Virus record (IMG/VR): IMGVR_UViG_3300042289_000986
Location: 124,001 to 188,000 of that record
Reading direction: 5' to 3' (one strand)
Length of the DNA: 64,000 nucleotides
The translations under genes were made by a program, and so were the position numbers. Within the stretch, counting starts at the first letter, position 1; every line of letters starts with the position of its first letter. Positions 14,660-46,431 of this stretch are shown here, in pieces. The notes below the pieces were generated by a model, which worked only from the letters and a program-made list of their open reading frames with translations, had not been told where the DNA came from and did not search any database.

Positions 14660-14688
14660 ATATTACACTATTTTAAGAAATAAATCAA
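14660..14688 (-). promoter_or_regulatory. Sigma70-type promoter for the DNA polymerase
   Basis: TTGATT-17-TAATAT, 6 nt before the ATG. Confidence 0.6.
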
Positions 14689-16001
14689 GGAGTGTCTTGA
14701 TCTGGATTGTTTTTAATTAAATTTGGTGCCATCGCTTTTCTAGCAGCAGACCCCCAATCTGTAGTATACAATGCCTCATATTCACCGATATGATCTTCTA
14801 GCCAAAGATTTTCGGTAAATTTTCTAGCATTGTCAGATGCTCTCATGTAACGGTCAAAGTCGGATGTGATATGTTCTAATTGATCAATTAAATCACTACC
14901 AGAATCAAATTTATAATCTGCTTCTTCGTATGTACACATGTCTTGGTATGCACCAGGAAGACCTATGCCACCCGCTTCTACCATTTTGATGTTACTCTTT
15001 GATTTATTAAATGTATTGTTTTGTAAAGAGGCAAACGCAACGTTACATTTTGTATCTGACAATCCTTTAGGATAATCTGGTAATGGGGACCAATCAATAT
15101 ATTCCATTTCACCATTATCAATATATGGTTTAAGAACTAGTGGATAGCAGCCTTTCCATACAAATTTAAATTTTTTACGAGCTTTAATGATAGCATCAGT
15201 TACGTGTTTGAAGTCATCGTTAAGACCAGTTCTATTCAAAACGTCGATGTGCGTCCCAGAACCAGAATACAAAATTCTCGGTCTTTTTTTGTTTTTTTCA
15301 AAAAGTTTAATAATACGTTCTCTATCATAAAATCTATCAAGCCAGAATTTTGGAGGATAGTTTGGTATGACTGTGATTTTTTTATTACCAGTTTTTTCTT
15401 GGTAATATTCTTTCATGAATTTGCATGTGACTGTCATTTCGTCACACATGTTAATGATTTCCAAAATACTATCTATAATTTCTTGTTGGACGAATGCGTC
15501 TTTGCAACGATTGTAATCTGGAATATCGTCTTTGAAGACGATATCATCGACTTCATACAGTAATTTAAATCCCATTTGAGGACTTGCTTTTTTAAGTTCT
15601 GCAATGAATTGCTTTTGAATTGGGGTAGCTTGTCTTTGCATTCTAATAGCTTTTAATCCTTGGTAAAATCTCAAATCTAATACCATTGCTGTTAAGCCAC
15701 TTATGCACATTTTTTGATAGCCATTTAAAACAAATTCTGGCCAAATCATTCTCCAGAAACCGCAACCACCATAATCAGCATAATAGTTTAATGCTCTAGG
15801 AAGCTTTGTTTCTGGCATTTCTACTGGTGGAGGTTGTGGAACGTGTACGGCATTGAACGCAACGTGGCTATATTCTGGTGCTCCAATTGGTAATCCTTTC
15901 GGAGGGTTGGGAATACCCGTTTTCATCGGGCGATATTCAAAAACCAAATTATTTCCAGTATAACTAGGTTGTGGGCTTTGTTCTTTTAATTTTAATGCCA
16001 T
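14685..16001 (-). CDS. GT-B fold glycosyltransferase
   Basis: GGCGFWRM, YEVDDIVF, VIPN, YSGSGTH, FNKSKSNIKMVEAG. Confidence 0.8.
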   Translation of the reverse strand: MALKLKEQSPQPSYTGNNLVFEYRPMKTGIPNPPKGLPIGAPEYSHVAFNAVHVPQPPPVEMPETKLPRALNYYADYGGCGFWRMIWPEFVLNGYQKMCISGLTAMVLDLRFYQGLKAIRMQRQATPIQKQFIAELKKASPQMGFKLLYEVDDIVFKDDIPDYNRCKDAFVQQEIIDSILEIINMCDEMTVTCKFMKEYYQEKTGNKKITVIPNYPPKFWLDRFYDRERIIKLFEKNKKRPRILYSGSGTHIDVLNRTGLNDDFKHVTDAIIKARKKFKFVWKGCYPLVLKPYIDNGEMEYIDWSPLPDYPKGLSDTKCNVAFASLQNNTFNKSKSNIKMVEAGGIGLPGAYQDMCTYEEADYKFDSGSDLIDQLEHITSDFDRYMRASDNARKFTENLWLEDHIGEYEALYTTDWGSAARKAMAPNLIKNNPDQDTP

Positions 16002-16030: not shown

Positions 16031-17827
16031 TCAACTTAATAAACTTGTGACTCCTTTGCTTTTTTCTAAAAGCAAAACATTATCAACGTTTACCTTTGTG
16101 TGATTTTTATGAGATATAATATAAACTGATTCTTCGTATTTCTCAACTTTATTTTTTAATATCTCGATGATTTTTTCAATCCCATTATCATCAATAGCTG
16201 AATCAAACAGTTCATCATAAAAATTTAATGAAAAACTTGTTCCAGTGTGAAGTCGCAAAATATCTTGGAACATAAAAAGAATTGCAATATCAATTCTTTT
16301 ACGTTCTCCACCACTAAAATTAAAGTAAGAGCATTCTTTTCCTTTATCGTTAAAAATTGTTTCTTCAAACAGTTCATCAAATTCACATTTGCATGGTGCT
16401 TGTAGTTTTTTTAAATAAAAATTTAAACGCTGATTAAAAACATCTATTAATTTTTTGACAATATATGTTTTAATTCCTTCTTCTGATACAATATATTTTG
16501 CGGTATTTAAAACTTTTAATTTATTTTTAATGTTTTCCAACTCACTTTGCGTGTTATCAATATCTTTTTTACATTTTTTAATGTCAGAATCAAAATTTGA
16601 TTTTTCTATTTCAATTTTATTGATATCTTTTTTATAATCAGTGTTTTGTTTTTTAAGAGTTTGAATATTTTGTTCTTTTAAACGTAAAGATGTTATTTCT
16701 TCATTTGTCTTTTTTTGTTTATTTTGAATTTTTTTAATTCCATCTTCAATTTCTTTGAGTTTTTCTTGTAAAGATTCTATTTGATTGTTTAATTCTTGAA
16801 GATCTTTTTGTAAATTTTTAATTTCAATTTCTATTGTTTTAACACTTTGTTGGATGTGGTTAATATCTTCTTTACAGTATTCTCTATTGCATGTCGGGCA
16901 AATATTTCCTTTACTAAGAATTTTTTGTTTTTCTTTGTTTTTTTGATCAATTGATGATTCTATTTTTATTTTTTCTTTTGTTTTATTTGAAATATCAGTG
17001 TGTTGTGTTTTATAAAACTTTTCTAAAAATTTAAGTTTTTCGTTTAATTCAGCAATTTCATTTTTTAAATTATTTCCAGATTTGGTAGTTTCATTTTCAA
17101 GTTTATTTATTTGTTTTTGATTGATTTCTATTTTTTGTTGAAGTTCTTTAATTTTATTTTTTTTATTGCTTTCATCATTATTTTTTAATTTTTCAAGCAT
17201 TTCTAAATTTTTTTGATGATTTATAAAATTATTACTCAAAAGATCATTTTGTTTTTTGCATTCATTAAAATCTGATCTAGTTTTAAGGAGCATTTCTCCA
17301 AAAACGTTTAGTTGCAAAATGCCTTCTATGAATTTTCTTTTATCGACTTTTTTTTGAGCCATAAAAGGCAGTGTATTATTTGAGGACATAATAACTGCAT
17401 TGTTAAAAACTTCTTCGTTTGCTCCTATTAGATTTTTTATATATTCATCACTTTTGGGTAAAGTTGATGGTGTTTCATCTTTACCATCAGATATAATAGT
17501 TATTTTACTGGGATTTAAAACTCTGTTAATTTCGTAACTTTTTTTATTTTTTTCTGTATGAATATCAAACTTAATAACCACATTACATTCTTTATTATTT
17601 TGATTGTGTTGTATTTTTTCTTTTTTCAGATCTCTAAGAGTGTTCCCAAACAAACACCAGTATAATGCATCTGCTATTGTGCTTTTTCCTATTCCATTTT
17701 TCCCGCCAATGTCTTTGTTTTCTCCAGTTATTAAATTAATTCCTTTTTGAAACTTTATTTCTAATGGTTTATCACCAATAGATAAAAAATTTTGAATTTT
17801 TATAGAATTAAAAATTACTTTTTTCAT
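16031..17827 (-). CDS. 46: Recombination nuclease ATPase subunit, gp46/SbcC/Rad50-like
   Basis: NFLSIG, NGIGKST, CPTC zinc hook, FSGGE, YDELFD, IISH. Confidence 0.95.
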   Translation of the reverse strand: MKKVIFNSIKIQNFLSIGDKPLEIKFQKGINLITGENKDIGGKNGIGKSTIADALYWCLFGNTLRDLKKEKIQHNQNNKECNVVIKFDIHTEKNKKSYEINRVLNPSKITIISDGKDETPSTLPKSDEYIKNLIGANEEVFNNAVIMSSNNTLPFMAQKKVDKRKFIEGILQLNVFGEMLLKTRSDFNECKKQNDLLSNNFINHQKNLEMLEKLKNNDESNKKNKIKELQQKIEINQKQINKLENETTKSGNNLKNEIAELNEKLKFLEKFYKTQHTDISNKTKEKIKIESSIDQKNKEKQKILSKGNICPTCNREYCKEDINHIQQSVKTIEIEIKNLQKDLQELNNQIESLQEKLKEIEDGIKKIQNKQKKTNEEITSLRLKEQNIQTLKKQNTDYKKDINKIEIEKSNFDSDIKKCKKDIDNTQSELENIKNKLKVLNTAKYIVSEEGIKTYIVKKLIDVFNQRLNFYLKKLQAPCKCEFDELFEETIFNDKGKECSYFNFSGGERKRIDIAILFMFQDILRLHTGTSFSLNFYDELFDSAIDDNGIEKIIEILKNKVEKYEESVYIISHKNHTKVNVDNVLLLEKSKGVTSLLS

Positions 17828-17838: not shown

Positions 17839-17867
17839 ATAATACCAGATTTATAAGAAAAAATCAA
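17839..17867 (-). promoter_or_regulatory. Sigma70-type promoter for gp46, overlapped by a 10-bp inverted repeat
   Basis: TTGATT-17-TATTAT; TTTCTTATAA(17833-42)/TTATAAGAAA(17851-60). Confidence 0.55.
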
Positions 17868-17869
17868 TT

Positions 17870-18589
17870 TTAAAAAAACTTAAAGTTTGTATAAAAATTT
17901 GAATCATATAAGTAATGATTACGATCCTCGTCATCTGGAAGCTCGATAACTCTTGGTATGTTCAAAGATGTTGCCCAAGCTGAAGGGCCTGTTAAATTTC
18001 CAACATAACACTTACAACTGTTTAATTTTAAAAAAAATTCATAAAGAGACTCAACTTTTTTCATTGGTAAAAGATCTTTATATGCAAATTTTTCATATTG
18101 TTCCGAATCAAAACAAATAAAAATGCAATTTTTATGCTTTTCTATTATTTGTTTATAAATTTCGTCTTTTTGTGGATGTGCTTTTCTTATAGATCTATTG
18201 ATCAAAACTGTATCTTTCAAAGAATCGTCTTTTTCTGAAATTTTAATCCACGAATAATTTTTTGGTGTTGTTTCTTCATCAAAAAAAGTTTTAAAATATA
18301 AATCAATCCAAGATGTTTTATATAAAAGTGGTGAATTTCTAAAATTTATTAAATTGATATCAATTTTTTGGTTATTATATATTTGTAAAGAGTTAAACCA
18401 TTCTTGTTTTTTTAAAATTGGAATTAAATCTTTAACAGTAACATCTAGGGATTTTTCAAAAGTATCTCCATTATTCGAAATAAATAAGTCGGCTTTGCTG
18501 TTTGTTTTTTCCCAAACATATTTGCAAACACAAAGACCGTGGATAAAATCTCCCAACTTTCCACCGCCCAAATAACTTTTATTTTCCAT
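17870..18589 (-). CDS. GT9/heptosyltransferase-like glycosyltransferase
   Basis: N-terminal GKLGDFI; C-terminal YVGNLTGPSAWATSLNIP. Confidence 0.6.
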   Translation of the reverse strand: MENKSYLGGGKLGDFIHGLCVCKYVWEKTNSKADLFISNNGDTFEKSLDVTVKDLIPILKKQEWFNSLQIYNNQKIDINLINFRNSPLLYKTSWIDLYFKTFFDEETTPKNYSWIKISEKDDSLKDTVLINRSIRKAHPQKDEIYKQIIEKHKNCIFICFDSEQYEKFAYKDLLPMKKVESLYEFFLKLNSCKCYVGNLTGPSAWATSLNIPRVIELPDDEDRNHYLYDSNFYTNFKFF

Positions 18590-18830
18590 ACATTTTGGTT
18601 GATCCTTGTTTATAGAGTTTCTGAAGTTTTCCGCTTCCCACTATTTCATTTATTTTTTCGTCAATTTCTTGGATAAGATCTGTACGATAAGAATTAGCTA
18701 CGTTTGTGACTCTTGTTGCATCAGCAATTTGTTTGTCCGATGCATTTTTGTCACGTTTAATGTCTTCAGCCATCCATATTCTAATGTTTGTAATTGTTAG
18801 TTTATCAATAAGATTTCCGATTGTTTCCAT
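18579..18830 (-). CDS. DUF4254-like small helical protein
   Basis: ETIGNLIDKLTITNIRIW...N..RTDLIQEID. Confidence 0.65.
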   Translation of the reverse strand: METIGNLIDKLTITNIRIWMAEDIKRDKNASDKQIADATRVTNVANSYRTDLIQEIDEKINEIVGSGKLQKLYKQGSTKMYGK

Positions 18831-18831
18831 T

Positions 18832-19764
18832 TTATATAATCCTTTCTATCATATTTTTATAATCTGAGGTCATTCTTTCTGGACTCCATTCATTATAAAG
18901 CATTTTTACCTTTTCGCAATTATTTAAAAAAGGTTTTAAGCTATTACACTGTTCATAATAGCCCAAATGATCGTGTAAATGTCTATACATGTGCGTTGAA
19001 TTGACAGCTAGAGCTTTTTGGGAGCTAATCGCAAGATCTGCACTACCTCCAACTCCAACATATATATCAGGAGCATTATAAAAATAAACATTTAAATCAT
19101 TTTTTGATAAAAACCCAATAACATCTAATTCTGTTTCAAAATAATGATTTGTAATATTCAATTTTACATTATTTTTTGTAATTTTATTTTTCCAAGACTC
19201 AAAAATTAAAGTCTCATCTTTCCCCCCAAAAGTGGCTTTTGTTAAGTTCATGTTAATATTAACTTCATCAAATTCGTGGTGGACAATATCAATAATAACG
19301 TCAAACATTTTCCAAGGAGAGACGCTAAATCCGTGTGATCCTATATTCAAAACATTATCAATTTTGCTATTTTTATTTTCGTATCTTCTAATTGGTCGAA
19401 TGGTTGTATATTTTTTTGAACTGACAATTGGATTTGTGTCATCGTGTATGATCCAAGCATCAAAGGTATCATTGTAAAAATCTATATCAGAAGGCTTTAA
19501 AGGATCGTGTATAATTCCTATATGTTTAATTTTTCCAAATTTTGATAAAATTTCTCTATTAATGTAGGGCAATGTTGAACAATAGTAATTGTATAAAATT
19601 ACGTCAGGTTTATTTTGTTCTATAAATTGAAAATATTCTTCTTTTGAAGAAGATTCTACATATGTTATATCTAATATATTTTTATCTAAAAGTTCAAAGA
19701 TTCTTTTTCCTATTTCATATACACCACATTGCGATTTTTGGTGATTAATAAATAAAATTTTCAT
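18832..19764 (-). CDS. GT-B fold glycosyltransferase-like protein
   Basis: MKILFIN...CGVYE, IIHD, IGSHGF, NDLNVYFY, SADLAIS; start at 19764. Confidence 0.65.
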   Translation of the reverse strand: MKILFINHQKSQCGVYEIGKRIFELLDKNILDITYVESSSKEEYFQFIEQNKPDVILYNYYCSTLPYINREILSKFGKIKHIGIIHDPLKPSDIDFYNDTFDAWIIHDDTNPIVSSKKYTTIRPIRRYENKNSKIDNVLNIGSHGFSVSPWKMFDVIIDIVHHEFDEVNINMNLTKATFGGKDETLIFESWKNKITKNNVKLNITNHYFETELDVIGFLSKNDLNVYFYNAPDIYVGVGGSADLAISSQKALAVNSTHMYRHLHDHLGYYEQCNSLKPFLNNCEKVKMLYNEWSPERMTSDYKNMIERII

Positions 19765-19765
19765 G

Positions 19766-20401
19766 TTAGTTTTTAACAAAAAAATCATTAACAAATGATC
19801 TCTGCTCTTTTTTCCAACCTAAACCATTTAAATATGTTTCAACTTCTGGTGTATTATAGTTATTTTCTATTATCAACAATTTTATATTATAAGAATTAAC
19901 ATCAAAAGATTTTAAAACATCTAATTCATTACCTTCTGTATCTATAGATATAAAATCTATTTCATTATGATCAAAATGATTTTGAATACACCAATCTAAT
20001 CTTCTTGTTTGGATTTTTATGGTTTTTCTTTCTATATTTGAAAAATGTTTTTGTATATCATTAACCAAAACATCATCTACTTGTAAACCGCTCATAGCAG
20101 AATGTGGTTGATCTACATCTTTAATTGTAAAAAGCTCAAAATCTACTTCATCTTTATTTTCAGAAGAAATGGCAAAGTTTAAACAATTTTTTCTATTATT
20201 TTTGAGTTTATTAAAAGTTTCTAAAACAGGTTCAATACAAAGACAATCCCAACCATTTTTTTCAAAATGGTATGTGTTCGAATAATAAACACCGTCAGTA
20301 GCTCCTACTTCAATACATTTTCCATTTTGTTTGTCTGGAAAATATTGTCTTATAATTTGATCTACTTTTGGATCGAATTGACCATAAAACTCATTAATCA
20401 T
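19766..20401 (-). CDS. FkbM-family SAM methyltransferase
   Basis: IEVGATDG...SNT, CIEP, FISIDTEGNELDVL. Confidence 0.9.
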   Translation of the reverse strand: MINEFYGQFDPKVDQIIRQYFPDKQNGKCIEVGATDGVYYSNTYHFEKNGWDCLCIEPVLETFNKLKNNRKNCLNFAISSENKDEVDFELFTIKDVDQPHSAMSGLQVDDVLVNDIQKHFSNIERKTIKIQTRRLDWCIQNHFDHNEIDFISIDTEGNELDVLKSFDVNSYNIKLLIIENNYNTPEVETYLNGLGWKKEQRSFVNDFFVKN

Positions 20402-21630
20402 TTTGAAATAATTTCAAATTTAGGACACGGAACAATGAATTTACCGCCATTTGACAAGTAATCGTCTTCTCTTTTAACGAACTCGTTAATAAAATGCCAA
20501 GGAAGCACTAACATGTAGTCTGGTTTCATTGCTCGGACTCTTTCTTCTGAGTAAATTGGGATATTTGTTCCAATTGTTTTTAAACCATATTTGTATGGGC
20601 TTCTTTCTGCGATGGCATCAATATAAGAATGATCTAAACCAAAATACTGTAAGAGAGTATTCCCTTTAGTTGATGCACCATAACCACAGATGACCTTTCC
20701 TTTGGCTTTTTCATTTTTAATGAAATCGACAGTTTCTTTTTTTAACCTTTCTGTTTGCTCAAAAAAGTTTAACCATATTTCTTTCTCATCTAATTTAAGA
20801 GTTTTCTCCCAAGACAGTAATGATTCTACTCTTACATTACAAACGTCTCTATATGGGGCCGTTGCGAACGAATGGTTGTCTGAAATTTTCTTTTTAATGT
20901 AAAGTCTAAAGCTTCCACCATTCACATCATTTAACTGACAATCAACTACCTTTAAGTTTGCTTCAGCTAAAACCTTTGTCATGGAGCTTAAAGCCCAATA
21001 ATAAACGTGTTCATGACAAATGTTATCAAATGCCATTTGTTTAATCATTAGTGGCGTATAGCTCATTTGAACAACAAACAAGCCATCGTCATCCAATACT
21101 TCATAAATGTCTTTTAAAAAGTCTACAGGCTCATCTAAATCATAAAACATGGCAATGCATGTAATAACTTTTGCTTTAACATCACGAAAACGAGATTTTT
21201 GATAGTTTTTCAATGTGAAAAAGTCTTGGATGATTTCATCGGCAAATTTTGATGACTCTTTTTTGAATGAATCATCCGCAGGATCAATCCCCAACTTTTT
21301 GATTTCTGTTGGAACATATGATAATAGAGTTCCATCGTTACATGCTATATCTAACCAAAGATCATCTTTTTCTAATTTTTGCAAGCTGCAAATGTTTTCA
21401 ACGATCCCCTTTAATTCGTTTTTCATGGTGGTGTTAATGCCACTGCGATACCAGTATTTTCCATACATTGTTTCGGTTGGAGTAATTTCTTTTAATCTTG
21501 CTGCTCCGTATCTTTCATCAATGACCAACGATAAATCGTGTTTACCCGCTCTTGCATCTGATTCTTGATCAATAAAATCTGAAACATATAATTCACCTAG
21601 ACTAAAAAGTTCTGTGTTGTATTTTTTCAT
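20398..21630 (-). CDS. NDP-sugar C-methyltransferase
   Basis: YWYRSG, LDIACNDGTLL, FDNICHEH, GGSFRLY, GYGASTKGNTLL, VLPWHF. Confidence 0.88.
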   Translation of the reverse strand: MKKYNTELFSLGELYVSDFIDQESDARAGKHDLSLVIDERYGAARLKEITPTETMYGKYWYRSGINTTMKNELKGIVENICSLQKLEKDDLWLDIACNDGTLLSYVPTEIKKLGIDPADDSFKKESSKFADEIIQDFFTLKNYQKSRFRDVKAKVITCIAMFYDLDEPVDFLKDIYEVLDDDGLFVVQMSYTPLMIKQMAFDNICHEHVYYWALSSMTKVLAEANLKVVDCQLNDVNGGSFRLYIKKKISDNHSFATAPYRDVCNVRVESLLSWEKTLKLDEKEIWLNFFEQTERLKKETVDFIKNEKAKGKVICGYGASTKGNTLLQYFGLDHSYIDAIAERSPYKYGLKTIGTNIPIYSEERVRAMKPDYMLVLPWHFINEFVKREDDYLSNGGKFIVPCPKFEIISK

Positions 21631-21635
21631 AAGGT

Positions 21636-22601
21636 TTATTTATTATATACTATTTTTAAGTCATTATCAACCATTTTCATAACCATTTCATTAAAACTTG
21701 TTTTTGGTTTCCAATTTAAAACATTTTGAGCTTTTGTTGAATTTCCTATTAAAACATCAACTTCCGCTGGTCTATAAAAATCTTTGTTAATTTTGATATA
21801 TTTTTCCCAATCTTTAATTCCTACATAATTAAAAGAAACATTTAAAAGATCTTTTATTGAGTGTAAAAGCCCAGTGGATATAACATAATCATCTGGTGTG
21901 TGGTGCTGTAACATAAGCCAAAAAGCCTCAACAAAATCAACAGCATATCCCCAATCTCTTTTTGATTCTATATTTCCAAGAGAAATATGATCTGTTAATC
22001 CTAATTTTATCTTGGCAACTCCTTGAGTTATTTTTCTAGAAACAAAAACTGGTTTTCTTCTTTCGCTTTCGTGATTAAACAAAATGCCATTACAAATAAA
22101 CATGTTATAGTTTTCTCTATAGTTTTTACACAACCAGTAACCATAAAGCTTAGAGCAGCCATATTGGGTTTTTGGACAAAATGGAGTATTTTCATTCGCT
22201 GGATTTTCAGTTATTCGTCCAAAAATTTCTGAAGATGCTGGTTGGAAAAATTTAATTTTTTTATTAAAAGTTTTAATTGATTCTAACCATCTTAATGTTC
22301 CTAAACCTGTTACGTTTGCATTGGATTCGGTATTTTTCCAGCAATCTTCCAAAAATGAATTACCTGCTAAGTTATAAATTTCATCAGGATTAGATTCTTC
22401 TAAACATTTTAAGATTGAAGATTGATCTGCTAAATCACCCTTAAGAAAAGTTATTTTATTTTTTAAATGGGTTGTATTTTCGTTTATGTTCTGATCTGGT
22501 TTTTGGATGCCGTAGATATGATATCCTCGATCAAGAAGAAAATCTGCTAGATGGCTACCATCCATTCCGTTGATACCTGCTATTAAAACTTTTTTAGACA
22601 T
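21636..22601 (-). CDS. gmd: GDP-mannose 4,6-dehydratase
   Basis: GINGMDGSHLA, YNLAG, SSEIFG, YGCSK, GILFNHES, RDWGYA, YRPAEV. Confidence 0.92.
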   Translation of the reverse strand: MSKKVLIAGINGMDGSHLADFLLDRGYHIYGIQKPDQNINENTTHLKNKITFLKGDLADQSSILKCLEESNPDEIYNLAGNSFLEDCWKNTESNANVTGLGTLRWLESIKTFNKKIKFFQPASSEIFGRITENPANENTPFCPKTQYGCSKLYGYWLCKNYRENYNMFICNGILFNHESERRKPVFVSRKITQGVAKIKLGLTDHISLGNIESKRDWGYAVDFVEAFWLMLQHHTPDDYVISTGLLHSIKDLLNVSFNYVGIKDWEKYIKINKDFYRPAEVDVLIGNSTKAQNVLNWKPKTSFNEMVMKMVDNDLKIVYNK

Positions 22602-23295
22602 AATCAGTTTCGTTTATTAATTTTTCATATTCTGTAAAATATGGAAAATATTTTGTTGAACCGTGAAAGCCAAAACTATTACCCAATATTGATTTTTCGT
22701 TAATATAGCTTTCTAATGAAAATTGTTGAGCAATTTGAACTGGTGCATATTTTATCCCTGCTTGTTTTAAATCTTTCCTGTGTAAAACCGATATTATTAC
22801 ATCTTCTTCTAATTCTGGATTTTTGTAATCTATTTTTGATGTTTCAATTAAAAGTTTTTTACTTCTTAAAGAAAAACCACCATTTCCAACAATATTTTTT
22901 ACATCACCTTGCATATTTGTTTTTTGCAAAACGTCTTTAGTTAAATGTTCGCCCCAAGGAGCACCAATATAATCATAATTGTAAAAAAAATCTGTCCACA
23001 GGTAAGGATTAACGACAAACCCATCAGGCTGAACAAACAAACAATACTCACTATCAATATATTTGTACATTTCTTTGATACAAAAAATATTATAATCCTT
23101 TAAACTGGCTAATCCATCAATTTTAATAACTTCAATATCAGAATATGATAAATTTTTATTAGTAATGATAATTTTTTGGTAAAAATTAATTTTTTCAGAA
23201 CTTATTTTAATAGCCTTTGCGCTATTTTCAGGATCTCTACCGTTTATTGAGACGATAGTTACTTTATTCAAATTTAGTTTTAAATTATCTTCCAT
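22594..23295 (-). CDS. DUF5672-type putative glycosyltransferase
   Basis: QPDGFV, YDYIGAPW, VGNGGFSLRSKKL, EDV, FGFHG. Confidence 0.8.
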   Translation of the reverse strand: MEDNLKLNLNKVTIVSINGRDPENSAKAIKISSEKINFYQKIIITNKNLSYSDIEVIKIDGLASLKDYNIFCIKEMYKYIDSEYCLFVQPDGFVVNPYLWTDFFYNYDYIGAPWGEHLTKDVLQKTNMQGDVKNIVGNGGFSLRSKKLLIETSKIDYKNPELEEDVIISVLHRKDLKQAGIKYAPVQIAQQFSLESYINEKSILGNSFGFHGSTKYFPYFTEYEKLINETDYV

Positions 23296-23981
23296 GTATT
23301 TTTAAGAATTGGGGTTGTAAGAGGACCAGTTCTCTTAAAGAAAATTTTTTTATTTTTCAAATTTGTTTGTTCGATTAAATTAGCAAAACAACTGTCGTAC
23401 ATAGCTAAAACTTTAGCATTTTCAAGAACATACATCCAATCAAAAACCGATTTAGAAAAAGGTTTTATCTCTATTAGTTGATAATCTTTTGGATATTCAA
23501 TTTGGTGTGGACATACACCATCAGAAACTTCTAATTGAACTACGCAATAATTGGGATTTTGTACTAATTGATTATATAAAGCAATTTCTCTTTCTTTTAT
23601 TCTATTAAATTTTAAATTCCATTTTTCTTCAAATGGAACTCTAGCAAGTTTATATCGAAATTCATCAAATGATAAACTATTTTGAGAAACAAACTGATGT
23701 GTATTTTTTCGGTGCCAAGTACCTGGTGATGTAAAAGATAAATCTAGCATAACACAACCTTTTTCAATAAAAATTTTTTCACTATCTTCTATGGGATTTA
23801 AATTTTGTGTATTAAGAGGATAGAATGATACATAATCAATATTGTCTTTAAAGTTATCAATTAAAAAATCATAAACTGGCCAATGAATATCATAACCTTG
23901 GTCGTGATAATATTTGGCAATAGGTAAACATATTATAATATCTCCTATTCTACCTGGTAATAAAATTCCTAACTTTTTCAT
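23280..23981 (-). CDS. GT9-like glycosyltransferase
   Basis: PGRIGDIIICLP; DSCFANL. Confidence 0.6.
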   Translation of the reverse strand: MKKLGILLPGRIGDIIICLPIAKYYHDQGYDIHWPVYDFLIDNFKDNIDYVSFYPLNTQNLNPIEDSEKIFIEKGCVMLDLSFTSPGTWHRKNTHQFVSQNSLSFDEFRYKLARVPFEEKWNLKFNRIKEREIALYNQLVQNPNYCVVQLEVSDGVCPHQIEYPKDYQLIEIKPFSKSVFDWMYVLENAKVLAMYDSCFANLIEQTNLKNKKIFFKRTGPLTTPILKNTWKII

Positions 23982-24748
23982 AGTTTTAAATATTTTTCTT
24001 CAAGTTCTTTTTCGTTTTCTAATGGAATTAAAAATTGCCCATAAGGTTCTCTTTTGATTAAATTTTCAAAAATAAACTGTTTCCATTTAATTGATAATGG
24101 ATTTTTTTCCCATAGCTTACTATTATACACTGCTTCTGGACTTGTTTCACTCCATTTTATATCATGTTTTTCATGAGCAGCATAAAATTCTTTATTTAAT
24201 ATAATACATTTACTAAGGTTATACATTTTTAATGTAAATGCCACATCCCAAAGATGTTCTGCATAAATATATTTTTCAAAATGAATATTGTTAGAATTCC
24301 ACCAATCTTTTTTGATTGCCCAAACATCAAAACCAGCTATTTCAATTCGATATGGTACAATATTTTCAAGTGATTGAATTGGGTGTGTGTCATGACGAGA
24401 CACACAATAAGTTTCATATTCTCCTGCTAAAACTAAATTTAAAAATTTTGGAGATAATAAAATATCACTATTTAAAAAAATAAAATAATCACAATTTTGT
24501 TTTGATAAAATATCAAAAAACTCTTTAGCTATTGGTTTTTGTGAATTAGAGTTATGAATAACATCTTTGGCCTTTTCATTTAACAAAGGTAAAGGAATAA
24601 ATGCCTCGTCCAAATTTTTTTCATTAGGATAGAATATATTGTATAGTTTAACATTAGAATATTTTAAAGAAATTTTTTTTAAAACTTCTATACATTTTTG
24701 TTGTCTTGGACAAGTTCCAAAAATATTAATTCCTATCGCTATATTCAT
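23978..24748 (-). CDS. GT-A-like putative glycosyltransferase
   Basis: FIFLNSDI, AGFDVW, HLWD, HEKH. Confidence 0.55.
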   Translation of the reverse strand: MNIAIGINIFGTCPRQQKCIEVLKKISLKYSNVKLYNIFYPNEKNLDEAFIPLPLLNEKAKDVIHNSNSQKPIAKEFFDILSKQNCDYFIFLNSDILLSPKFLNLVLAGEYETYCVSRHDTHPIQSLENIVPYRIEIAGFDVWAIKKDWWNSNNIHFEKYIYAEHLWDVAFTLKMYNLSKCIILNKEFYAAHEKHDIKWSETSPEAVYNSKLWEKNPLSIKWKQFIFENLIKREPYGQFLIPLENEKELEEKYLKL

Positions 24749-25532
24749 TTTTGATTGATTTTAAAAAATTAACTACATCTTCTTGGGTACTGTCTGGTAT
24801 TTCATTAACCATAATACCATGTTTGTTTATAAAAAGCTGCCACTGTTCTCTAATTCTTTCTTCTCTAGAACCGTCTGGTCTTTCGGATTGTAAACGACTT
24901 TTGGCGTTTTGGTTGTTTTCTATTAAATCATCTGAGTTTTTAAGATCAGGAAACCACCAAAAAGGAGGACAGTATTTTGTTTTTGACTCTCGGTAAGCCA
25001 TATCAATATCAAAGGGATCACGAAATTGGGTATCATATACGCCAACTTCGTCAAAACACGATGAATTGTGATAAGTGAATTCATTGCACATGTTTTTATA
25101 AAAAGATATCCCAACATTTTCACTATAGTTAACTGTAAGTCTTGGGGTCCTATTATTTGGACTTCCAGAATCCCATGACATGCTGACAAATGAAAAGTAA
25201 TTTATGCCTGATGTTTTAGACGCTTCGATATATTTTTCAAATATATGTTCATTTTTAATGATCATATCATCTTCTATTAAGAAAATATGCTTGCAGTTTC
25301 TATTTTTTAGAAAATTGATACAATCATTTCTACAAAAAGCTGGATAATAATTTTTGTGGTGTTGTATCCAGTTTGTATCATATAAAGATTCATTATATCG
25401 TTCTCCTCCGTTTACTGTTACCAGTTCGTCTATTTTATTTTTAGGAAGCGAGTTATATAAATCTTTAAAATAAGATTCAGAATTGTACGTAACGATACCT
25501 ACACCTATTTTTTCTATTGGTTGTTTTTCCAT
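24726..25532 (-). CDS. GT2-family glycosyltransferase
   Basis: IGVGIVTYN, HIFLIEDDM, VGVYD. Confidence 0.85.
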   Translation of the reverse strand: MEKQPIEKIGVGIVTYNSESYFKDLYNSLPKNKIDELVTVNGGERYNESLYDTNWIQHHKNYYPAFCRNDCINFLKNRNCKHIFLIEDDMIIKNEHIFEKYIEASKTSGINYFSFVSMSWDSGSPNNRTPRLTVNYSENVGISFYKNMCNEFTYHNSSCFDEVGVYDTQFRDPFDIDMAYRESKTKYCPPFWWFPDLKNSDDLIENNQNAKSRLQSERPDGSREERIREQWQLFINKHGIMVNEIPDSTQEDVVNFLKSIKNEYSDRN

Positions 25533-26314
25533 ATAACTTTTAAGTTATCTAAACATTGTTTTTCTGAAAAATTTTTTTCAACAGGACCATAACCTTGAAC
25601 TACACTAAACCCGTTTTTAGAAATGAAATAATCTAAAGCTTTAATAAAAGTTTGTTGAAAGTCATTTTCGTTTCTTATTTTACTTTGTTGGTGATCTGGA
25701 ACTATATCTTTTAAATAGTCGTTAGAATTTTCAATATCAGCAAACCACCTAAACGGTGGGTGATATTTTTTTTGAATTATTTGATATGTGTGATCTACGT
25801 GCTCAAGAGCATTATAAAAATTTTCATCCATTAATCCAATTTTTTTAAGTACATCTATATGATAATAGCTAAATGCTCCTAGTAAATTTGGATATAAATT
25901 TATTTTTGTGTTGTCTGGATAATTGACGGTTTTTCTAATTATTGGTGCGTTATTATAACCCAAGTTATGGTTACCATGAAGTCCATAATTAAAGTGCTTA
26001 ATACCTGTTGATTTCGATGCTTCGATATATTTTTCTAAAATTTCTTTATTTATAATTTCAATATCATCCTCCATTAAAAAAATATGATCACATTTTTGAT
26101 CAATTAAATATTCTAAAGCAATATTTTTTGCTTTAGCTACTCCTGATTTAGGAATGTTTGTATTTTTTTTATTTAGAGTAGAATTAACCTTATTTTCACC
26201 ATCATCTACTATAATTTTAATGCACTCTAAATCTAAAATAGAACTTTCAGATTTTTTGAAAAAATCTGGGCGGTCACAGGTTATTAAACCGATTCCAATT
26301 TTTTCATTGTTCAT
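25514..26314 (-). CDS. GT2-family glycosyltransferase
   Basis: IGIGLITCDR, GVAKAKN, HIFLMEDDI, IGLMDENF, EHVD. Confidence 0.88.
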   Translation of the reverse strand: MNNEKIGIGLITCDRPDFFKKSESSILDLECIKIIVDDGENKVNSTLNKKNTNIPKSGVAKAKNIALEYLIDQKCDHIFLMEDDIEIINKEILEKYIEASKSTGIKHFNYGLHGNHNLGYNNAPIIRKTVNYPDNTKINLYPNLLGAFSYYHIDVLKKIGLMDENFYNALEHVDHTYQIIQKKYHPPFRWFADIENSNDYLKDIVPDHQQSKIRNENDFQQTFIKALDYFISKNGFSVVQGYGPVEKNFSEKQCLDNLKVIWKNNQ

Positions 26315-27068
26315 TTTTACTATAATTTTTTTGAATTTCTTCTAAAGATTTTAACAATTCTTCTCTGGGAACTGGTGCAGGTTCATTTTGTAAAGGTATA
26401 TATTGATATTTGAACATGAAATAAGCATAAGACATGTGGACACTTTGATCAGCATTTAACATATCTTTGTAGTTTATTTTTTGGATTGTGCTACTTGATG
26501 AGTCTATATCTTTTTCAATAATAGGATGATAGTTATTTGGCGGATAAACTTTCTTTTCGCGCATTCTTAAAATATAATCAACAACATCTAAATCTTTGGT
26601 ATTAAAAAATCTTTCATCAAAATAGCCAACGTTAGAAACTATACCATTAAACAAATATATAAAATCGGCATTTAGTTTATTTGATATTGATAAACTTTCA
26701 TTTTTTTCTTCATCATCAATAGTTACAATGCTTTCAGACGGTCCCATCATAGCCCATGTTCCGAAAATTGAAGCTTTTTTAATTATGTTTTCAAAAACGT
26801 TTTCGTTTTTTATAATTTGATTTGAATTAATTAAGAAAAAATGTTTTAATCCTGCTATTCTAAATTGTGAAATGAGCCAATTACGTAAAGACGCAAACGG
26901 AACGCCATTTCCGTAAACTCTATAATTTTCTACGCTTTCAGGTATGTTATTTTTTGTATCAGAAACCACGAAGACTTTTAAATCTTTGGGAATGCTGTTA
27001 TAACAATTGTTTAAATCCTCTTGCGTATAAACGTCTAATATTCCTATTCCTATTTCTTCTTTATTCAT
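26304..27068 (-). CDS. Degenerate GT2-like protein (lacks DxD/EDD)
   Basis: IGIGI, LRN and VGYFDERF as in its two neighbours, but HFFLINSNQ in place of HIFLxEDD. Confidence 0.65.
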   Translation of the reverse strand: MNKEEIGIGILDVYTQEDLNNCYNSIPKDLKVFVVSDTKNNIPESVENYRVYGNGVPFASLRNWLISQFRIAGLKHFFLINSNQIIKNENVFENIIKKASIFGTWAMMGPSESIVTIDDEEKNESLSISNKLNADFIYLFNGIVSNVGYFDERFFNTKDLDVVDYILRMREKKVYPPNNYHPIIEKDIDSSSSTIQKINYKDMLNADQSVHMSYAYFMFKYQYIPLQNEPAPVPREELLKSLEEIQKNYSKNEQ

Positions 27069-28114
27069 ACTAATGAATTATACATTTCTTTTAAATATTC
27101 TACAACTTCTTTTTTATGATCAATATCTAAAGTATTGATATATTCTTCAATATCTTTTAATAAATCACCACTATTAAAGTTTTCTTCGTTTGAAATTTTT
27201 TGAATATCTTCTTCATTTTCAATATATTCTAAACGATATACTAAGGGATTCATGTTGTTAATTTTTGTGTTTAATCCCAATATAATATCATGTTCTATTT
27301 TTAGATCGACAACCAATGCCACAATATTATTGTGTATAATTTTTTTAAGTTCTTCAACTTCATATTCATCATTAATTAGTTTTTTAGCCGATATTTTATA
27401 ATGTTTTGGTGATAATGTGTTTTCAATAAAAGAAAAAGAATGTTTTTCTAAATCAAATATATAAATTCCTTTATCTTCTGCAACGGCTCCAAAATTTTGT
27501 TGATATGGACTTCCTAAATAAACTATATCACCTTCTTTATAGGTTCTGTGATCTCTTTTATGAAAATGTCCCGAAACAATCAAATTAGCTTTATTAAAAA
27601 GATTAGAGTAAGACAGTCCGTGATCACATTGTTTATAGTTATTCATATAAAATGAAACTATTTCAAAGTGACCAAAGATGATATCAACTTTTTCTAATTT
27701 TTCAATATCATATCCCCAAGGAACAAATGTTATTTTTTTATTAAAATCAGTTTCTAAAATTAATGGAGTTTTATCAACAATTTTTATATTTTTCCAACCA
27801 TCAAAAATAGATATTGAATTTATATTACTATCGTTTTTTAAAAAACTATCATGGTTTCCGGTGGAAATAATAATATTAAAATCTTTAAAATAATCAAAAA
27901 ATTGTTTTGCAATAGATAAAGTCTCTACTGATATTTCATTTCTATTGTGAAATATATCACCAGGTATAAAAATATCATCAATTCCTTCTTCTAAGAATTT
28001 TTGAGATGCCCATTTTGCAAAATTTAAACTAACCTCATGCCACATTTCGCTGTCTTGGCCTAAACCGAGATGAATATCTGAAAAACTTCCTATTTTTTTG
28101 TTTTTTAGTTTCAT
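27065..28114 (-). CDS. 47: Recombination nuclease subunit, gp47/SbcD/Mre11-like
   Basis: SDIHLG, GDIFH, GNHD, FGHFE, SGHFH, YLGSPYQ. Confidence 0.95.
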   Translation of the reverse strand: MKLKNKKIGSFSDIHLGLGQDSEMWHEVSLNFAKWASQKFLEEGIDDIFIPGDIFHNRNEISVETLSIAKQFFDYFKDFNIIISTGNHDSFLKNDSNINSISIFDGWKNIKIVDKTPLILETDFNKKITFVPWGYDIEKLEKVDIIFGHFEIVSFYMNNYKQCDHGLSYSNLFNKANLIVSGHFHKRDHRTYKEGDIVYLGSPYQQNFGAVAEDKGIYIFDLEKHSFSFIENTLSPKHYKISAKKLINDEYEVEELKKIIHNNIVALVVDLKIEHDIILGLNTKINNMNPLVYRLEYIENEEDIQKISNEENFNSGDLLKDIEEYINTLDIDHKKEVVEYLKEMYNSLV

Positions 28115-43057: not shown

Positions 43058-43066
43058 ATAAAAAAT

Positions 43067-46090: not shown

Positions 46091-46092
46091 TT

Positions 46093-46431
46093 ATGAAAAA
46101 CGTAGAAATATATGATCAATATGCAAATGTTTATTTGAATAATCAAACTAATGAATTAGTTGTATTAAATTTAAATTATAATGAAGAATTAGATACAAGT
46201 TTATATACTTTGGTTCATTCTAGTTCTGGTTTTGTTATATCAAAAGGTGAAAATTTAAACACGGAAAGTGCATTAAGTTTAGTCGAAGAACTTTATGTAG
46301 AATCCCAAAATTTAGGAGAAAATTATCAAGAAAAAAATATAAATTTAGAAAATGGCTACGTGGAAATGATTATATCTTTCAATGACGGTAAAAAACTTAA
46401 TAGAGTTATCTATATTAAGGATAATTTATAA
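46093..46431 (+). CDS. Hypothetical protein
   Basis: 112-aa acidic ORF, ATG at 46093. Confidence 0.65.
   Translation: MKNVEIYDQYANVYLNNQTNELVVLNLNYNEELDTSLYTLVHSSSGFVISKGENLNTESALSLVEELYVESQNLGENYQEKNINLENGYVEMIISFNDGKKLNRVIYIKDNL

What the first reader, a model, noticed from the sequence alone, without database searches (positions are those of the whole stretch)
17870..27068. 12-gene glycan-synthesis cassette splitting the gp47-gp46 pair
Seen: gp47 and gp46, near-adjacent in T4, are separated by 9.2 kb of overlapping or abutting genes: three GT2-like, one GT-A-like, two GT9-like, DUF5672, Gmd, NDP-sugar C-methyltransferase, FkbM methyltransferase, a GT-B and a DUF4254-like gene. gp46 has its own promoter downstream of the insert. 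Established: Gmd makes GDP-4-keto-6-deoxymannose, the type of keto-sugar that sugar C-methyltransferases act on; T4's DNA alpha-glucosyltransferase maps close to gene 47. Inference: the pathway builds an oligosaccharide containing a branched, possibly O-methylated 6-deoxyhexose. The acceptor is unresolved: virion proteins, host LPS/surface (superinfection exclusion) or DNA.
Basis: partly seen in the sequence, partly recalled or inferred. Interest (0 to 1): 0.75.

Follow-up and report, generated by a model that had tools for sequence, protein, structure and literature searches.

The report
Variable glycan-synthesis island in lake phage
An uncultured T4-like lake phage carries 12 sugar-building genes between two recombination genes, at a site where its relatives carry quite different sugar-gene sets, so these phages seem to make strain-specific glycans whose target (most likely their own tail fibres, otherwise the host surface) is untested.

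Summary
Twelve tightly packed minus-strand ORFs (17870-27068) lie between gp47 and gp46 of a complete 211.6-kb T4-like phage found in at least 24 lake metagenomes. Gmd, a TylC3/MtmC-type sugar C-methyltransferase, FkbM, DUF5672 and DUF4254 pass Pfam. Three paralogous GT-A-type transferases match only a phage family. One GT-A-like and two GT9-like genes rest on Atlas neighbours. One GT-B gene rests on a confident model.

It is not a one-off insertion. In about 60 relatives the order uvsW-gp55-gp47-[0 to more than 10 kb]-gp46-GT-B is conserved, and the gap holds more than 115 protein clusters. The ten commonest and seven further clusters were scanned; 13 of the 17 hit sugar enzymes and four hit nothing. 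None is a multi-pass membrane protein.

The phage has no base hydroxymethylase, TET enzyme, T4 DNA glucosyltransferase, lipid-carrier priming enzyme or second sugar reductase. DNA is therefore an unlikely acceptor. The enzymes must work on something reachable from the cytoplasm.

My best guess is the phage's own collagen-like Gly-X-Thr tail fibres, which flank another GT2 gene. The host's LPS core is the main rival. This is a new variant of the known glycan gene clusters of aquatic T4-like phages.

The parts
27065..28114 (-). gp47 (Mre11/SbcD-like nuclease subunit). Conserved upstream border of the island. Its stop overlaps the start of gene A.
   Evidence: Metallophos 2e-8. 36-91% identical and syntenic in about 50 relatives.
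26304..27068 (-). A: GT-A-type paralogue, 254 aa, probably non-catalytic. The EDD (DXD) motif is replaced by NSN and VNDG by VSDT.
   Evidence: phrog_2456 5e-6. Paralogue of B and C. The motif loss is shared by all 7 orthologues, each the first gene after gp47.
25514..26314 (-). B: GT-A/GT2-like glycosyltransferase, 266 aa, EDD motif kept.
   Evidence: phrog_2456 2e-24. Weak TIGR01556 rhamnosyltransferase hit, 2e-4. Alignment A4. Weak profile hits to the GT-A enzymes GmaR, GalT1 and Mimivirus R699.
24726..25532 (-). C: GT-A/GT2-like glycosyltransferase, 268 aa, EDD motif kept.
   Evidence: phrog_2456 1e-17. 31% identical to B. Alignment A4.
23978..24748 (-). D: GT-A-like protein, 256 aa, with an invariant N-S-D at the DXD position.
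   Evidence: No Pfam or PDB hit. The Atlas nearest cluster has a fold like GT2/Glyco_transf_7C proteins, TM 0.62-0.86. Alignment A6.
23280..23981 (-). E: short GT9-like protein, 233 aa, with an N-terminal G-R-I-G-D motif.
   Evidence: Atlas structural neighbours carry PF01075, DUF6165 or DUF5672 fusions, TM 0.75-0.93. Shares its N-terminal motif with L. No Pfam hit.
22594..23295 (-). F: DUF5672 protein, 233 aa, presumed glycosyltransferase-like. The domain is fused to GT2 or GT9 domains in many phage proteins.
   Evidence: PF18922 3e-23. Fusion clusters in the Atlas. Expanded to 489 aa in relative L008.
21636..22601 (-). G: GDP-mannose 4,6-dehydratase, 321 aa.
   Evidence: PF16363 7e-106. TIGR01472 361 bits, below its 415 cut-off. 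P. aeruginosa GMD 1rpn 2e-93, with the GxxGxxG, SSE, YxxxK and NHES motifs kept.
20398..21630 (-). H: NDP-hexose C-methyltransferase of the TylC3/TcaB9/MtmC type, 410 aa, lacking the N-terminal Cys4 zinc domain.
   Evidence: PF08484 3e-46 and PF13489 7e-12. MtmC 4rv9 1.5e-40, TcaB9 3e-27. No Cys in residues 1-80.
19766..20401 (-). I: FkbM-family methyltransferase, 211 aa.
   Evidence: PF05050 7e-20. Directly followed by a J homologue in the window, L008, L010 and L011.
18832..19794 (-). J: GT-B (GT4-like) glycosyltransferase. The true start is probably at 19788 (318 aa).
   Evidence: No Pfam or PDB sequence hit. 81 homologues, mostly on phage-sized contigs. Model pLDDT 92, pTM 0.90. Foldseek: HepE, TreT, GlgM, BshA at 1e-11 to 1e-9. 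30% identical homologue annotated as GT4 in cyanophage DSL-LC02.
18579..18830 (-). K: DUF4254 fragment-sized protein, 83 aa, probable partner of L.
   Evidence: PF14063 6e-8. The Atlas holds giant-virus proteins carrying DUF6165, with DUF4254 in a tenth of members, that align to L at TM 0.90. K overlaps L by 11 nt.
17870..18589 (-). L: short GT9-like / DUF6165-like protein, 239 aa. This is the most exchangeable end of the cassette.
   Evidence: Atlas. Replaced by an unrelated 210-aa ORF in L002, whose gp46 is 94% identical.
17839..17867 (-). Sigma-70-like promoter candidate for gp46: TTGATT, 17 nt spacer, TATTAT, then 11 nt to the ATG.
   Evidence: Sequence. A -10 box, and a -35/-10 pair, are positionally conserved in island-bearing relatives. 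The single-window scan alone is not above chance.
16031..17827 (-). gp46 (Rad50/SbcC-like subunit). Conserved downstream border of the island.
   Evidence: AAA_23 and SMC_N. 27-29% identical to T4-like gp46 proteins.
14685..16001 (-). M: lineage-core GT-B (GT4-like) glycosyltransferase, 438 aa, with a proline-rich N-terminus.
   Evidence: phrog_7162 6e-19. Next to gp46 in nearly every relative, including island-less ones, at 38-99% identity. Model pLDDT 88.5. Foldseek: BshA, WaaG, MshA at about 1e-10.
48124..49233 (-). Additional Pfam GT2 gene, 369 aa, among the tail-fibre genes.
   Evidence: PF00535 3e-10. Conserved at 80% identity in relative G001 next to the fibre genes.
41168..51059 (.). 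Four collagen-like tail-fibre genes (41168-43057 +, 43067-44170 +, 46456-47907 +, 50157-51059 -) rich in Gly-X-Thr triplets. These are my candidate acceptors; this is inference.
   Evidence: Collagen Pfam 8e-36 for the 483-aa protein. Tail-fibre PHROGs. Thr at the third position in 27 of 46, 48 of 80 and 9 of 13 triplets.

Best explanation
Shown:
- The 12 genes are one allele of a hypervariable glycan-assembly island. It sits at a fixed site (gp47 | gp46) in an uncultured aquatic T4-like lineage and is co-oriented with the recombination and replication genes. Co-transcription with them is inferred from the overlapping junctions.
- Every island protein is soluble or at most single-anchored. The phage encodes no enzyme that makes GDP-mannose or primes a lipid carrier.

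Inferred pathway:
1. Host GDP-mannose is converted by Gmd to GDP-4-keto-6-deoxymannose.
2. H C-methylates it, most likely at C3 as in the virenose or mycarose routes.
3. The 4-keto group is reduced by a host enzyme, by Gmd itself or by H.
4. The GT-B enzyme J transfers the sugar, and its constant neighbour FkbM O-methylates it.
5. The GT-A enzymes B, C and D, the GT9-like E and K+L, and DUF5672 build the rest of a short oligosaccharide.
6. The conserved GT-B enzyme M next to gp46 may add the first, invariant sugar.

Inferred acceptor: most likely the phage's own virion proteins, specifically the collagen-like Gly-X-Thr tail fibres, glycosylated in the cytoplasm before assembly. Exchange of island content between relatives would then give each strain a different glycan coat.
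For: Gene identities.

Fixed site with variable content:
- 25 loci have no insert, 24 have 3.5-10 kb, and at least 8 have more than 10 kb.
- 320 island ORFs fall into more than 115 clusters, 65 of them singletons.
- The representatives scanned are GT2, GT1/4, GT7C, GT10, GT11, GT47, HtrL, FkbM, sugar isomerase, UDP-GlcNAc 2-epimerase and DegT.

Cytoplasmic chemistry only:
- None of the 337 island and flanking proteins screened has more than one hydrophobic 19-mer.
- The genome has no Bac_transf or WecA-type primer and no NTP_transferase.

Against DNA.

Candidate acceptor: four collagen-like Gly-X-Thr fibre genes flank a GT2 gene. They are kept in relative G001, whose island is different.

Other pointers:
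- The island's families (DUF5672, DUF6165-like, DUF4254) are shared mainly with phages and giant viruses. That giant viruses glycosylate their own particles is my recollection.
- The weak profile hits of A/B/C include the GmaR and GalT1 chains. That both are protein O-glycosyltransferases is my recollection.
Against: - No glycan or glycoprotein has been observed; the acceptor is pure inference.
- The island lies in the early/middle replication module, not with the structural genes as in mycobacteriophages.
- Several families in relatives' islands (GT9-like, HtrL_YibB, GT10/GT11, GT25) are typical of LPS core or O-antigen synthesis. LPS core is also built on the cytoplasmic face without Wzx or Wzy.
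- I could not test whether island-less relatives lack the Gly-X-Thr fibres.
- No 4-ketoreductase is encoded, so the sugar product is uncertain.
- No RNA run was listed.
Confidence: 0.4

Rival explanations
1. The island remodels the host envelope. Its soluble transferases extend or cap the host's lipid A-core, or a host-primed undecaprenyl-linked glycan, on the cytoplasmic face, and host MsbA or flippases export it. The altered surface would block superinfection by competing phages and stop progeny from adsorbing to infected cells or debris.
For: - GT9-like, HtrL_YibB, GT10, GT11 and GT25 families occur in the window or in relatives' islands.
- Expression alongside early/middle genes would suit host takeover (layout).
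- This is the reading given in the literature for glycosyltransferase clusters of pelagimyophages and cyanomyophages (PMC7029224, PMC12801897).
- Lacking its own primer or flippase is compatible with core-type assembly.
Against: - Strain-specific glycans normally need matching flippases, polymerases or ligases, and none occurs in about 45 islands.
- The host is unknown, so even the presence of LPS is unverified.
- The GT-B enzyme M is conserved in relatives without any island.
- The families are shared mainly with viruses rather than with cellular LPS loci.
Confidence: 0.3
2. The island hypermodifies phage DNA with an oligosaccharide, as T-even phages glucosylate hydroxymethylcytosine, to evade restriction.
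For: - In T4 the alpha-glucosyltransferase gene lies beside genes 55 and 47 (established knowledge).
- J and M are GT-B enzymes. T4 AGT appears among their Foldseek hits at rank 12 and rank 30, with TM about 0.5-0.6.
- M sits in the replication module and is conserved across the lineage.
Against: - The complete genome has no ThyA-type base hydroxymethylase, no Tet_JBP dioxygenase and no AGT or BGT family member.
- A ThyX gene lies downstream of the polymerase in relative L008, suggesting ordinary thymidine. The syntenic window ORF was not scanned.
- The AGT similarity is the generic GT-B fold.
- Eight or more transferases plus a C-methyl deoxysugar pathway are far beyond any known DNA glycan.
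Confidence: 0.04
3. The enzymes make a free or lipid-linked small glycoconjugate, or glycosylate a host cytoplasmic protein, as a metabolic or takeover function unrelated to any surface.
For: C-methyl and O-methyl deoxysugars are typical of natural-product pathways: H is closest to MtmC and TcaB9. Relatives' islands hold 2,3-dehydratase, B12-radical-SAM and aminotransferase genes.
Against: - There are no aglycone-synthesis genes (PKS, NRPS or terpene) among the island genes annotated so far.
- O-antigen-like turnover of content at a fixed site argues for a surface-exposed product under diversifying selection.
Confidence: 0.1

Closest known systems
LPS / cell-wall glycan gene clusters of T4-like cyanomyophages and pelagimyophages (P-SSM2, S-SCSM1, S-SCSM2R, PMP genomes; PMC12801897, PMC7029224)
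   Same: Aquatic T4-like phages with many glycosyltransferases and NDP-sugar enzymes in plastic regions. Function never tested; usually read as host-surface modification.
   Different: Here the genes occupy one defined site between gp47 and gp46 inside the recombination module. The site has conserved borders and cassette replacement among relatives. In pelagimyophages the glycosyltransferases lie mainly in the tail-fibre 'host recognition cluster', and the published freshwater group is reported to lack LPS genes (PMC7029224). No cultured phage is closer than about 30% identity in gp46 or portal.
Cassette of Synechococcus phage DSL-LC02 (OR032571): Gmd, methyltransferase, GDP-L-fucose synthase, GT, GT4, FkbM, then a GT, a hypothetical protein and four more GTs
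   Same: Shares Gmd (44%), the C-methyltransferase (33%), the J-type GT-B (31%) and FkbM (21%), in one co-directional cluster.
   Different: It lies at another genome position, not between gp47 and gp46. It encodes the epimerase/reductase that the window lacks. The remaining transferases are unrelated.
Proposed GDP route to virenose (6-deoxy-3-C-methyl-hexose) of Coxiella burnetii LPS: GMD, TylCIII-like C-3 methyltransferase, GMER (PMC3539893)
   Same: A GDP-mannose dehydratase feeds a TylC3-type C-methyltransferase.
   Different: No GMER or RMD homologue is present here. H lacks the zinc domain. The Coxiella route is itself only an in-silico proposal.
Bacterial O-antigen / capsule loci (variable cassette between conserved flanking genes)
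   Same: Fixed chromosomal site, conserved borders, wholesale exchange of glycosyltransferase and sugar-pathway genes between close relatives.
   Different: No Wzx, Wzy, ABC transporter, ligase or priming transferase in any island, and the replicon is a lytic-type phage genome.
Virus-encoded virion glycosylation (mycobacteriophage capsid and tail glycans, Freeman et al. 2023 as cited in PMC12619734; chlorovirus and mimivirus glycans, from my own knowledge)
   Same: Soluble virus-encoded transferases and sugar-nucleotide enzymes (chloroviruses also encode GMD). DUF5672, DUF6165 and DUF4254 families are shared with giant viruses.
   Different: No evidence yet that this phage's particles are glycosylated. 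The island is not in the structural operon; only the separate GT2 at 48124-49233 is.

Membership tests
GDP-mannose 4,6-dehydratase (Gmd) | Full-length match to the family profile | tested here: met
   PF16363 covers 6-310 of 321 aa, 7e-106. Eleven solved GMDs at 1e-81 to 1e-93.
GDP-mannose 4,6-dehydratase (Gmd) | Score above NCBIfam's equivalog cut-off (TIGR01472, 415 bits) | tested here: not met
   361 bits. It is still far the best family; the next, dTDP-glucose dehydratase, scores 81 bits.
GDP-mannose 4,6-dehydratase (Gmd) | Catalytic Ser/Thr-x-Glu, Tyr-x3-Lys and the N-terminal glycine-rich NADP motif | tested here: met
   Alignment to 1rpn shows GINGMDG, SSE, YGCSK and FNHES. The catalytic roles are as listed for P. 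aeruginosa GMD in PMC3539893.
GDP-mannose 4,6-dehydratase (Gmd) | Enzyme activity, and whether it also reduces the 4-keto product | not testable with these tools
   Needs an assay.
NDP-hexose 3-C-methyltransferase (TylC3 / TcaB9 / MtmC) | SAM-methyltransferase domain plus the C-terminal Methyltransf_14 domain | tested here: met
   PF13489 7e-12 and PF08484 3e-46. MtmC 1.5e-40 and TcaB9 3e-27 over residues 44-408.
NDP-hexose 3-C-methyltransferase (TylC3 / TcaB9 / MtmC) | N-terminal four-cysteine zinc-binding domain | tested here: not met
   PDB alignments start at residue 44 (chain residue 62), and residues 1-80 hold no Cys. No PF08421 hit.
NDP-hexose 3-C-methyltransferase (TylC3 / TcaB9 / MtmC) | Nucleotide specificity (GDP versus TDP) and carbon methylated | not testable with these tools
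   GDP is inferred from the adjacent Gmd and from the same pairing in L008, L026 and DSL-LC02.
GT2 (inverting GT-A transferases), for A, B and C | Match to the Pfam GT2 profiles | tested here: not met
   No Pfam hit at E up to 10. The six-frame PF00535 search of the genome found only the gene at window 48124-49233. Support comes from phrog_2456 and weak profile hits to GT-A chains.
GT2 (inverting GT-A transferases), for A, B and C | DXD metal and nucleotide-sugar motif | tested here: inconclusive
   B and C and their orthologues keep E-D-D. A and its 6 orthologues have NSN, GSN, TSN, HSN, SSN or HTD instead.
GT9 (heptosyltransferase-like GT-B), for E and L | Match to PF01075 | tested here: not met
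   No hit. The genome-wide PF01075 search found only a weak hit elsewhere, at genome 5559-5657.
GT9 (heptosyltransferase-like GT-B), for E and L | Fold and neighbourhood resemblance to GT9 proteins | tested here: inconclusive
   Atlas structural neighbours include PF01075-bearing clusters at TM 0.65-0.78, but the nearest clusters are unnamed viral families. At 233-239 aa, E and L are about 100 aa shorter than typical GT9 enzymes.
GT4-like GT-B, for J and M | Two-Rossmann GT-B fold | tested here: met
   Models at pLDDT 92 and 88.5. Top Foldseek hits are all GT-B enzymes at 1e-11 to 1e-9.
GT4-like GT-B, for J and M | Sequence membership (Pfam Glycos_transf_1 / Glyco_transf_4) | tested here: not met
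   J has none. M has only PF13439 at E 0.13.
O-antigen / capsule locus | Priming phosphoglycosyl transferase | tested here: not met
   No PF02397 or PF00953 in the genome.
O-antigen / capsule locus | Flippase and polymerase, or an ABC transporter | tested here: not met
   No island protein in the window or in about 45 relatives has more than one hydrophobic segment.
O-antigen / capsule locus | Variable cassette between conserved flanking genes | tested here: met
T-even type DNA glycosylation | Base hydroxymethylase (ThyA-like) or TET/JBP dioxygenase providing the handle | tested here: not met
   the genome is 100% complete with terminal repeats.
T-even type DNA glycosylation | AGT or BGT family transferase | tested here: not met
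Virus-encoded virion glycosylation | Glycan attached to capsid, tail or fibre proteins | not testable with these tools
   Needs particles or co-expression. Candidate acceptors are named from sequence only.

The most novel reading that the evidence does not exclude
These phages carry a 'serotype locus' of their own. It would be a recombination-prone island, bordered by gp47 and gp46 and anchored by a conserved GT-B enzyme. It would dress collagen-like Gly-X-Thr tail fibres, or other virion proteins, with strain-specific oligosaccharides containing rare sugars such as a 6-deoxy-C-methyl-O-methyl-hexose. Phage particles would then show O-antigen-like glycan diversity that affects host recognition, grazing or stability.
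Probability: 0.3. Interest if true: 0.8.

Novelty: new variant of a known kind. Interest (0 to 1): 0.55.

Why it matters
Glycosyltransferase clusters have been noted in aquatic T4-like phages since 2005, but nobody knows what they glycosylate.

This lineage offers a clean natural experiment. It has one fixed site, conserved borders, dozens of alternative cassettes and a sister clade with none.

It also narrows the acceptor question. DNA is unlikely, the phage encodes no lipid-carrier priming or export step of its own, and Thr-rich collagen-like fibres are a concrete candidate.

If virions are the target, phage particles would have glycan 'serotypes', with consequences for adsorption, decay and recognition in lakes. 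The Gmd plus zinc-less C-methyltransferase pair is also a compact candidate route to a rare branched GDP-sugar.

Tried and rejected
- **Sigma-70 and terminator scan.** The scan of 14-31 kb found 100 promoter-like sites against 104 expected, so it is uninformative in this AT-rich DNA.
- **T4 late-promoter motif TATAAATA.** It is depleted: 5 in the window against 14 expected, and 21 in the genome. Its positions do not mark gene starts convincingly. The copy inside gene B (26047-26054) was not taken as a promoter.
- **PDB searches.** Single-sequence searches for D, E, J, L and F, and a profile search for J, found nothing useful.
- **Profile-profile comparison.** Comparing the F and D families with the A/B/C family was not significant; only the DXD-strand region aligned.
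- **Megablast.** The cassette found nothing among GenBank phages.
- **Cellular J homologue.** The Planctomycetota copy sits in an uninformative context.
- **Literature.** The 'moraphage' paper (PMC12619734) and the DUF5672/DUF4254 searches added nothing specific.
- **Expression data.** No RNA run was listed, so expression timing could not be examined.
- **Metagenome contigs laid on the cassette.** These confirmed presence but showed no informative structural variant.
- **Host.** I did not pursue host identity. The published freshwater pelagimyophages are reported to lack LPS genes, so equating this phage with them was rejected.
- **Outgroup rooting of the gp46 tree.** It rests on branches of 4-6 changes per site and is only suggestive.

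Full report
**1. What is there**

The window is bases 124001-188000 of a 211,587-bp virus record with direct terminal repeats, rated 100% complete, at 32% G+C.

Genes run on the minus strand in this order:
- UvsY (30250-30675)
- a UvsW-like helicase
- a gp55-like sigma factor
- gp47 (27065-28114)
- twelve ORFs
- gp46 (16031-17827)
- a 438-aa glycosyltransferase-like gene, here called M
- DNA polymerase

From gp47 to the twelfth ORF, every junction overlaps by 4-29 nt or leaves 1-5 nt. The only gap (42 bp) precedes gp46.

**2. Gene identities**

I name the twelve A to L, starting from the gp47 side.

Five have solid Pfam matches:
- G is Gmd (PF16363, 7e-106).
- H is a sugar C-methyltransferase (PF08484, 3e-46).
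- I is FkbM (7e-20).
- F is DUF5672 (3e-23).
- K is a DUF4254 fragment (6e-8).

G aligns to P. aeruginosa GMD at 2e-93 with the cofactor and catalytic motifs intact. It scores 361 bits against NCBIfam's 415-bit equivalog cut-off.

H is closest to MtmC (1.5e-40) and TcaB9 (3e-27) from residue 44 on. It lacks the N-terminal four-cysteine zinc domain.

A, B and C are mutual paralogues at 24-31% identity. They match only a phage glycosyltransferase family (phrog_2456) and no Pfam profile. In an alignment of 25 family members, B- and C-type proteins keep an E-D-D motif at the DXD position. All seven A-type proteins have NSN, GSN, TSN, HSN, SSN or HTD there. Each A-type protein is the first gene after gp47. 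They have also changed the upstream VNDG motif. A is therefore probably a non-catalytic partner.

D, E and L have no Pfam or PDB sequence match. ESM Atlas neighbours place D with GT-A/GT2-like folds. They place E and L with short GT9-like and DUF6165-like viral proteins. E and L share the N-terminal G-(R/K)-(I/L)-G-D motif.

J has 81 homologues, almost all unannotated. An AlphaFold model at pLDDT 92 is a GT-B fold closest to GT4 enzymes.

Only five are family members by curated thresholds.

**3. The cassette is one allele of a lineage-wide island**

Close relatives:
- L008 (gp46 82% identical) has the same 12 genes at 54-91% identity, with DUF5672 enlarged to 489 aa.
- L002 (gp46 94%) has L replaced by an unrelated ORF, and its J is only 79% identical.
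- L003 (gp46 54%) has a different gene set.

A metagenome scan gave 80 more loci with gp46 at 35-58% identity. The order uvsW-gp55-gp47-[gap]-gp46-M holds throughout. Gap sizes are as follows:
- about 0 bp in 25 loci, where gp47 and gp46 are at most 37 bp apart and mostly abut or overlap
- 3.5-10 kb in 24 loci
- more than 10 kb in at least 8 loci

The 320 island ORFs fall into more than 115 clusters, 65 of them singletons.

I scanned the ten commonest clusters and seven further ones; 13 of these 17 representatives hit sugar enzymes and four hit nothing. The hits are GT2, GT1/4, Glyco_transf_7C, Glyco_trans_1_2, GT10, GT11, GT47, Gly_transf_sug, HtrL_YibB, FkbM, a sugar-isomerase fusion, UDP-GlcNAc 2-epimerase and a DegT aminotransferase. 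A further contig (L010) adds RmlC-like, 2,3-dehydratase, 3-ketoreductase and B12-radical-SAM genes, plus GT10 and GT25.

A second near-complete relative is G001 (210.6 kb, gp46 49% identical). Its island is about 8 kb and holds 10 genes that include a GT11-like transferase.

On a gp46 tree the island-less loci form one well-supported group (96/94). A single change explains the distribution. With midpoint or outgroup rooting that group is nested among island-bearing ones. This suggests an old island lost once, but the outgroup branches are very long.

**4. The gp46 promoter**

A consensus scan of the window alone is at chance level. The 42-bp gap does hold TTGATT-17-TATTAT, ending 11 nt before the ATG.

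Across 26 island-bearing relatives with unrelated upstream genes:
- a -10-like hexamer ends 6-16 nt before the gp46 start in 18 (background 13.6%, binomial p about 1e-10)
- a full -35/-10 pair is present in 11 (background 1.7%)

Some of these loci are related, so the p-values are optimistic. The spacing implies a very short leader or none.

**5. Pathway logic**

The genome encodes no mannose-1-phosphate guanylyltransferase, so GDP-mannose must come from the host.

Gmd should give GDP-4-keto-6-deoxymannose. H should C-methylate it. C3 is the position methylated by its solved relatives, which are named 3-C-methyltransferases.

The C-methyltransferase occurs only together with a Gmd: in the window, L002, L008 and L026.

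Cyanophage DSL-LC02 has Gmd, a 33%-identical methyltransferase and a GDP-L-fucose synthase side by side. A J homologue follows two genes downstream, with FkbM next to it. That triad is the GDP route proposed for virenose in Coxiella (PMC3539893).

Here Gmd is the only SDR in the genome. The 4-keto reduction could be done in three ways:
- by a host enzyme
- by Gmd itself; bifunctional GMDs are reported, including that of P. aeruginosa (PMC3539893)
- by H; MtmC is a bifunctional 4-ketoreductase and 3-C-methyltransferase, although the methylated sugar there is reduced by a separate enzyme (PMC10269268)

FkbM is immediately followed by a J homologue in four independent contexts. This suggests a unit that transfers a sugar and then O-methylates it.

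**6. Acceptor**

DNA. The complete genome lacks a ThyA-type hydroxymethylase, Tet_JBP, AGT and BGT. The similarity of J and M to T4 AGT is generic GT-B fold similarity.

Lipid-linked export. No island protein, in the window or in about 45 relatives, has more than one hydrophobic segment. The genome has neither class of priming transferase. Whatever is glycosylated must be reachable from the cytoplasm: phage or host proteins, or the host's lipid A-core or host-primed carriers.

A lead from the window's structural block. Four tail-fibre genes carry collagen-like repeats in which Thr fills the third position of about 60% of the triplets in the three longest arrays (27 of 46, 48 of 80 and 9 of 13). 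They flank a bona fide Pfam GT2 gene. The arrangement is kept in G001. Thr-rich collagen-like repeats are the O-glycosylation sites of the Bacillus exosporium protein BclA. That is my own recollection, not something checked here.

I therefore rank virion (fibre) glycosylation first at about 0.4. Host envelope remodelling follows at about 0.3. A small glycoconjugate or host protein target is about 0.1, and DNA about 0.04.

The gene M is a GT-B enzyme. It stays beside gp46 even in island-less relatives. It may add a conserved first sugar that the island then elaborates. This is inference.

**7. Context and novelty**

The phage recurs in at least 24 lake-water runs. One run holds an identical 64.7-kb contig.

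No cultured phage is closer than about 30% identity in gp46 or portal.

Glycosyltransferase clusters in aquatic T4-like phages are known and uncharacterised (PMC7029224, PMC12801897). Three things are new here:
- the defined hot spot with O-antigen-like cassette turnover
- the zinc-less C-methyltransferase module shared with a cyanophage
- the narrowed set of possible acceptors

I rate it a new variant of a known kind, with interest 0.55.

Noticed in passing
window 41168-51059: Four collagen-like tail-fibre genes with Gly-X-Thr triplets (46, 80 and 13 triplets in three of them, plus a weaker fourth) surround a Pfam GT2 gene at 48124-49233. The fibres are about 50-74% identical in relative G001, while a neighbouring 410-aa gene is 96% identical.
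   Followed up: partly
window 14685-16001 (-): A GT-B glycosyltransferase with a proline-rich, low-confidence N-terminus lies directly downstream of gp46 in nearly every relative of the lineage, including those without any island. It appears to be a core gene of unknown acceptor.
   Followed up: partly
genome 36105-84242, outside the window: ARAGORN finds 20 tRNA genes and a tmRNA (genome 65196-65653, complement, tag ADEEMLLAA) in this phage genome. There are none inside the window.
   Followed up: no
window, whole: The T4 late-promoter octamer TATAAATA is under-represented: 5 copies against 14.1 expected from shuffles, with all 100 shuffles having at least 5. Six of the 21 genome copies end 6-12 nt before an ORF start.
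   Followed up: partly
L023, L024, L026, L051, L073, L078, L083, L050 and others, just upstream of gp46: The conserved -10-like box ends only 6-8 nt before the gp46 ATG in most island-bearing relatives. This implies leaderless or nearly leaderless mRNAs in this lineage.
   Followed up: partly
window 26304-27068 and its orthologues in L008, L024, L031, L037, L040 and L047: The first gene after gp47 is a conserved GT-A paralogue that has lost the DXD motif. It is seen only in the clade that holds the window.
   Followed up: partly
L010 (ena ERZ27247880 k141_791274), 1-20933: A relative carries at least 20 kb of sugar genes. They include a 2,3-dehydratase, a 3-ketoreductase, an RmlC-like isomerase, a B12-binding radical-SAM enzyme, a SPASM radical-SAM enzyme, GT10 and GT25. 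This looks like a 2,6-dideoxy or C-alkylated sugar pathway of natural-product type inside a phage.
   Followed up: no
window 11427-12071 (-): The 214-aa ORF after the DNA polymerase is syntenic with a ThyX (PF02511) gene annotated in L008. The genome has no ThyA homologue.
   Followed up: partly
genome 5559-5657 (L005): A 360-aa ORF near the left end gives a weak GT9 (PF01075) hit at 8e-4. It is a possible further glycosyltransferase outside the island.
   Followed up: no
window 16000-18000: The gp46 region is the most AT-rich part of the stretch (22-25% G+C against 32% for the genome). The cassette itself (25-34%) is not compositionally distinct from its surroundings.
   Followed up: no
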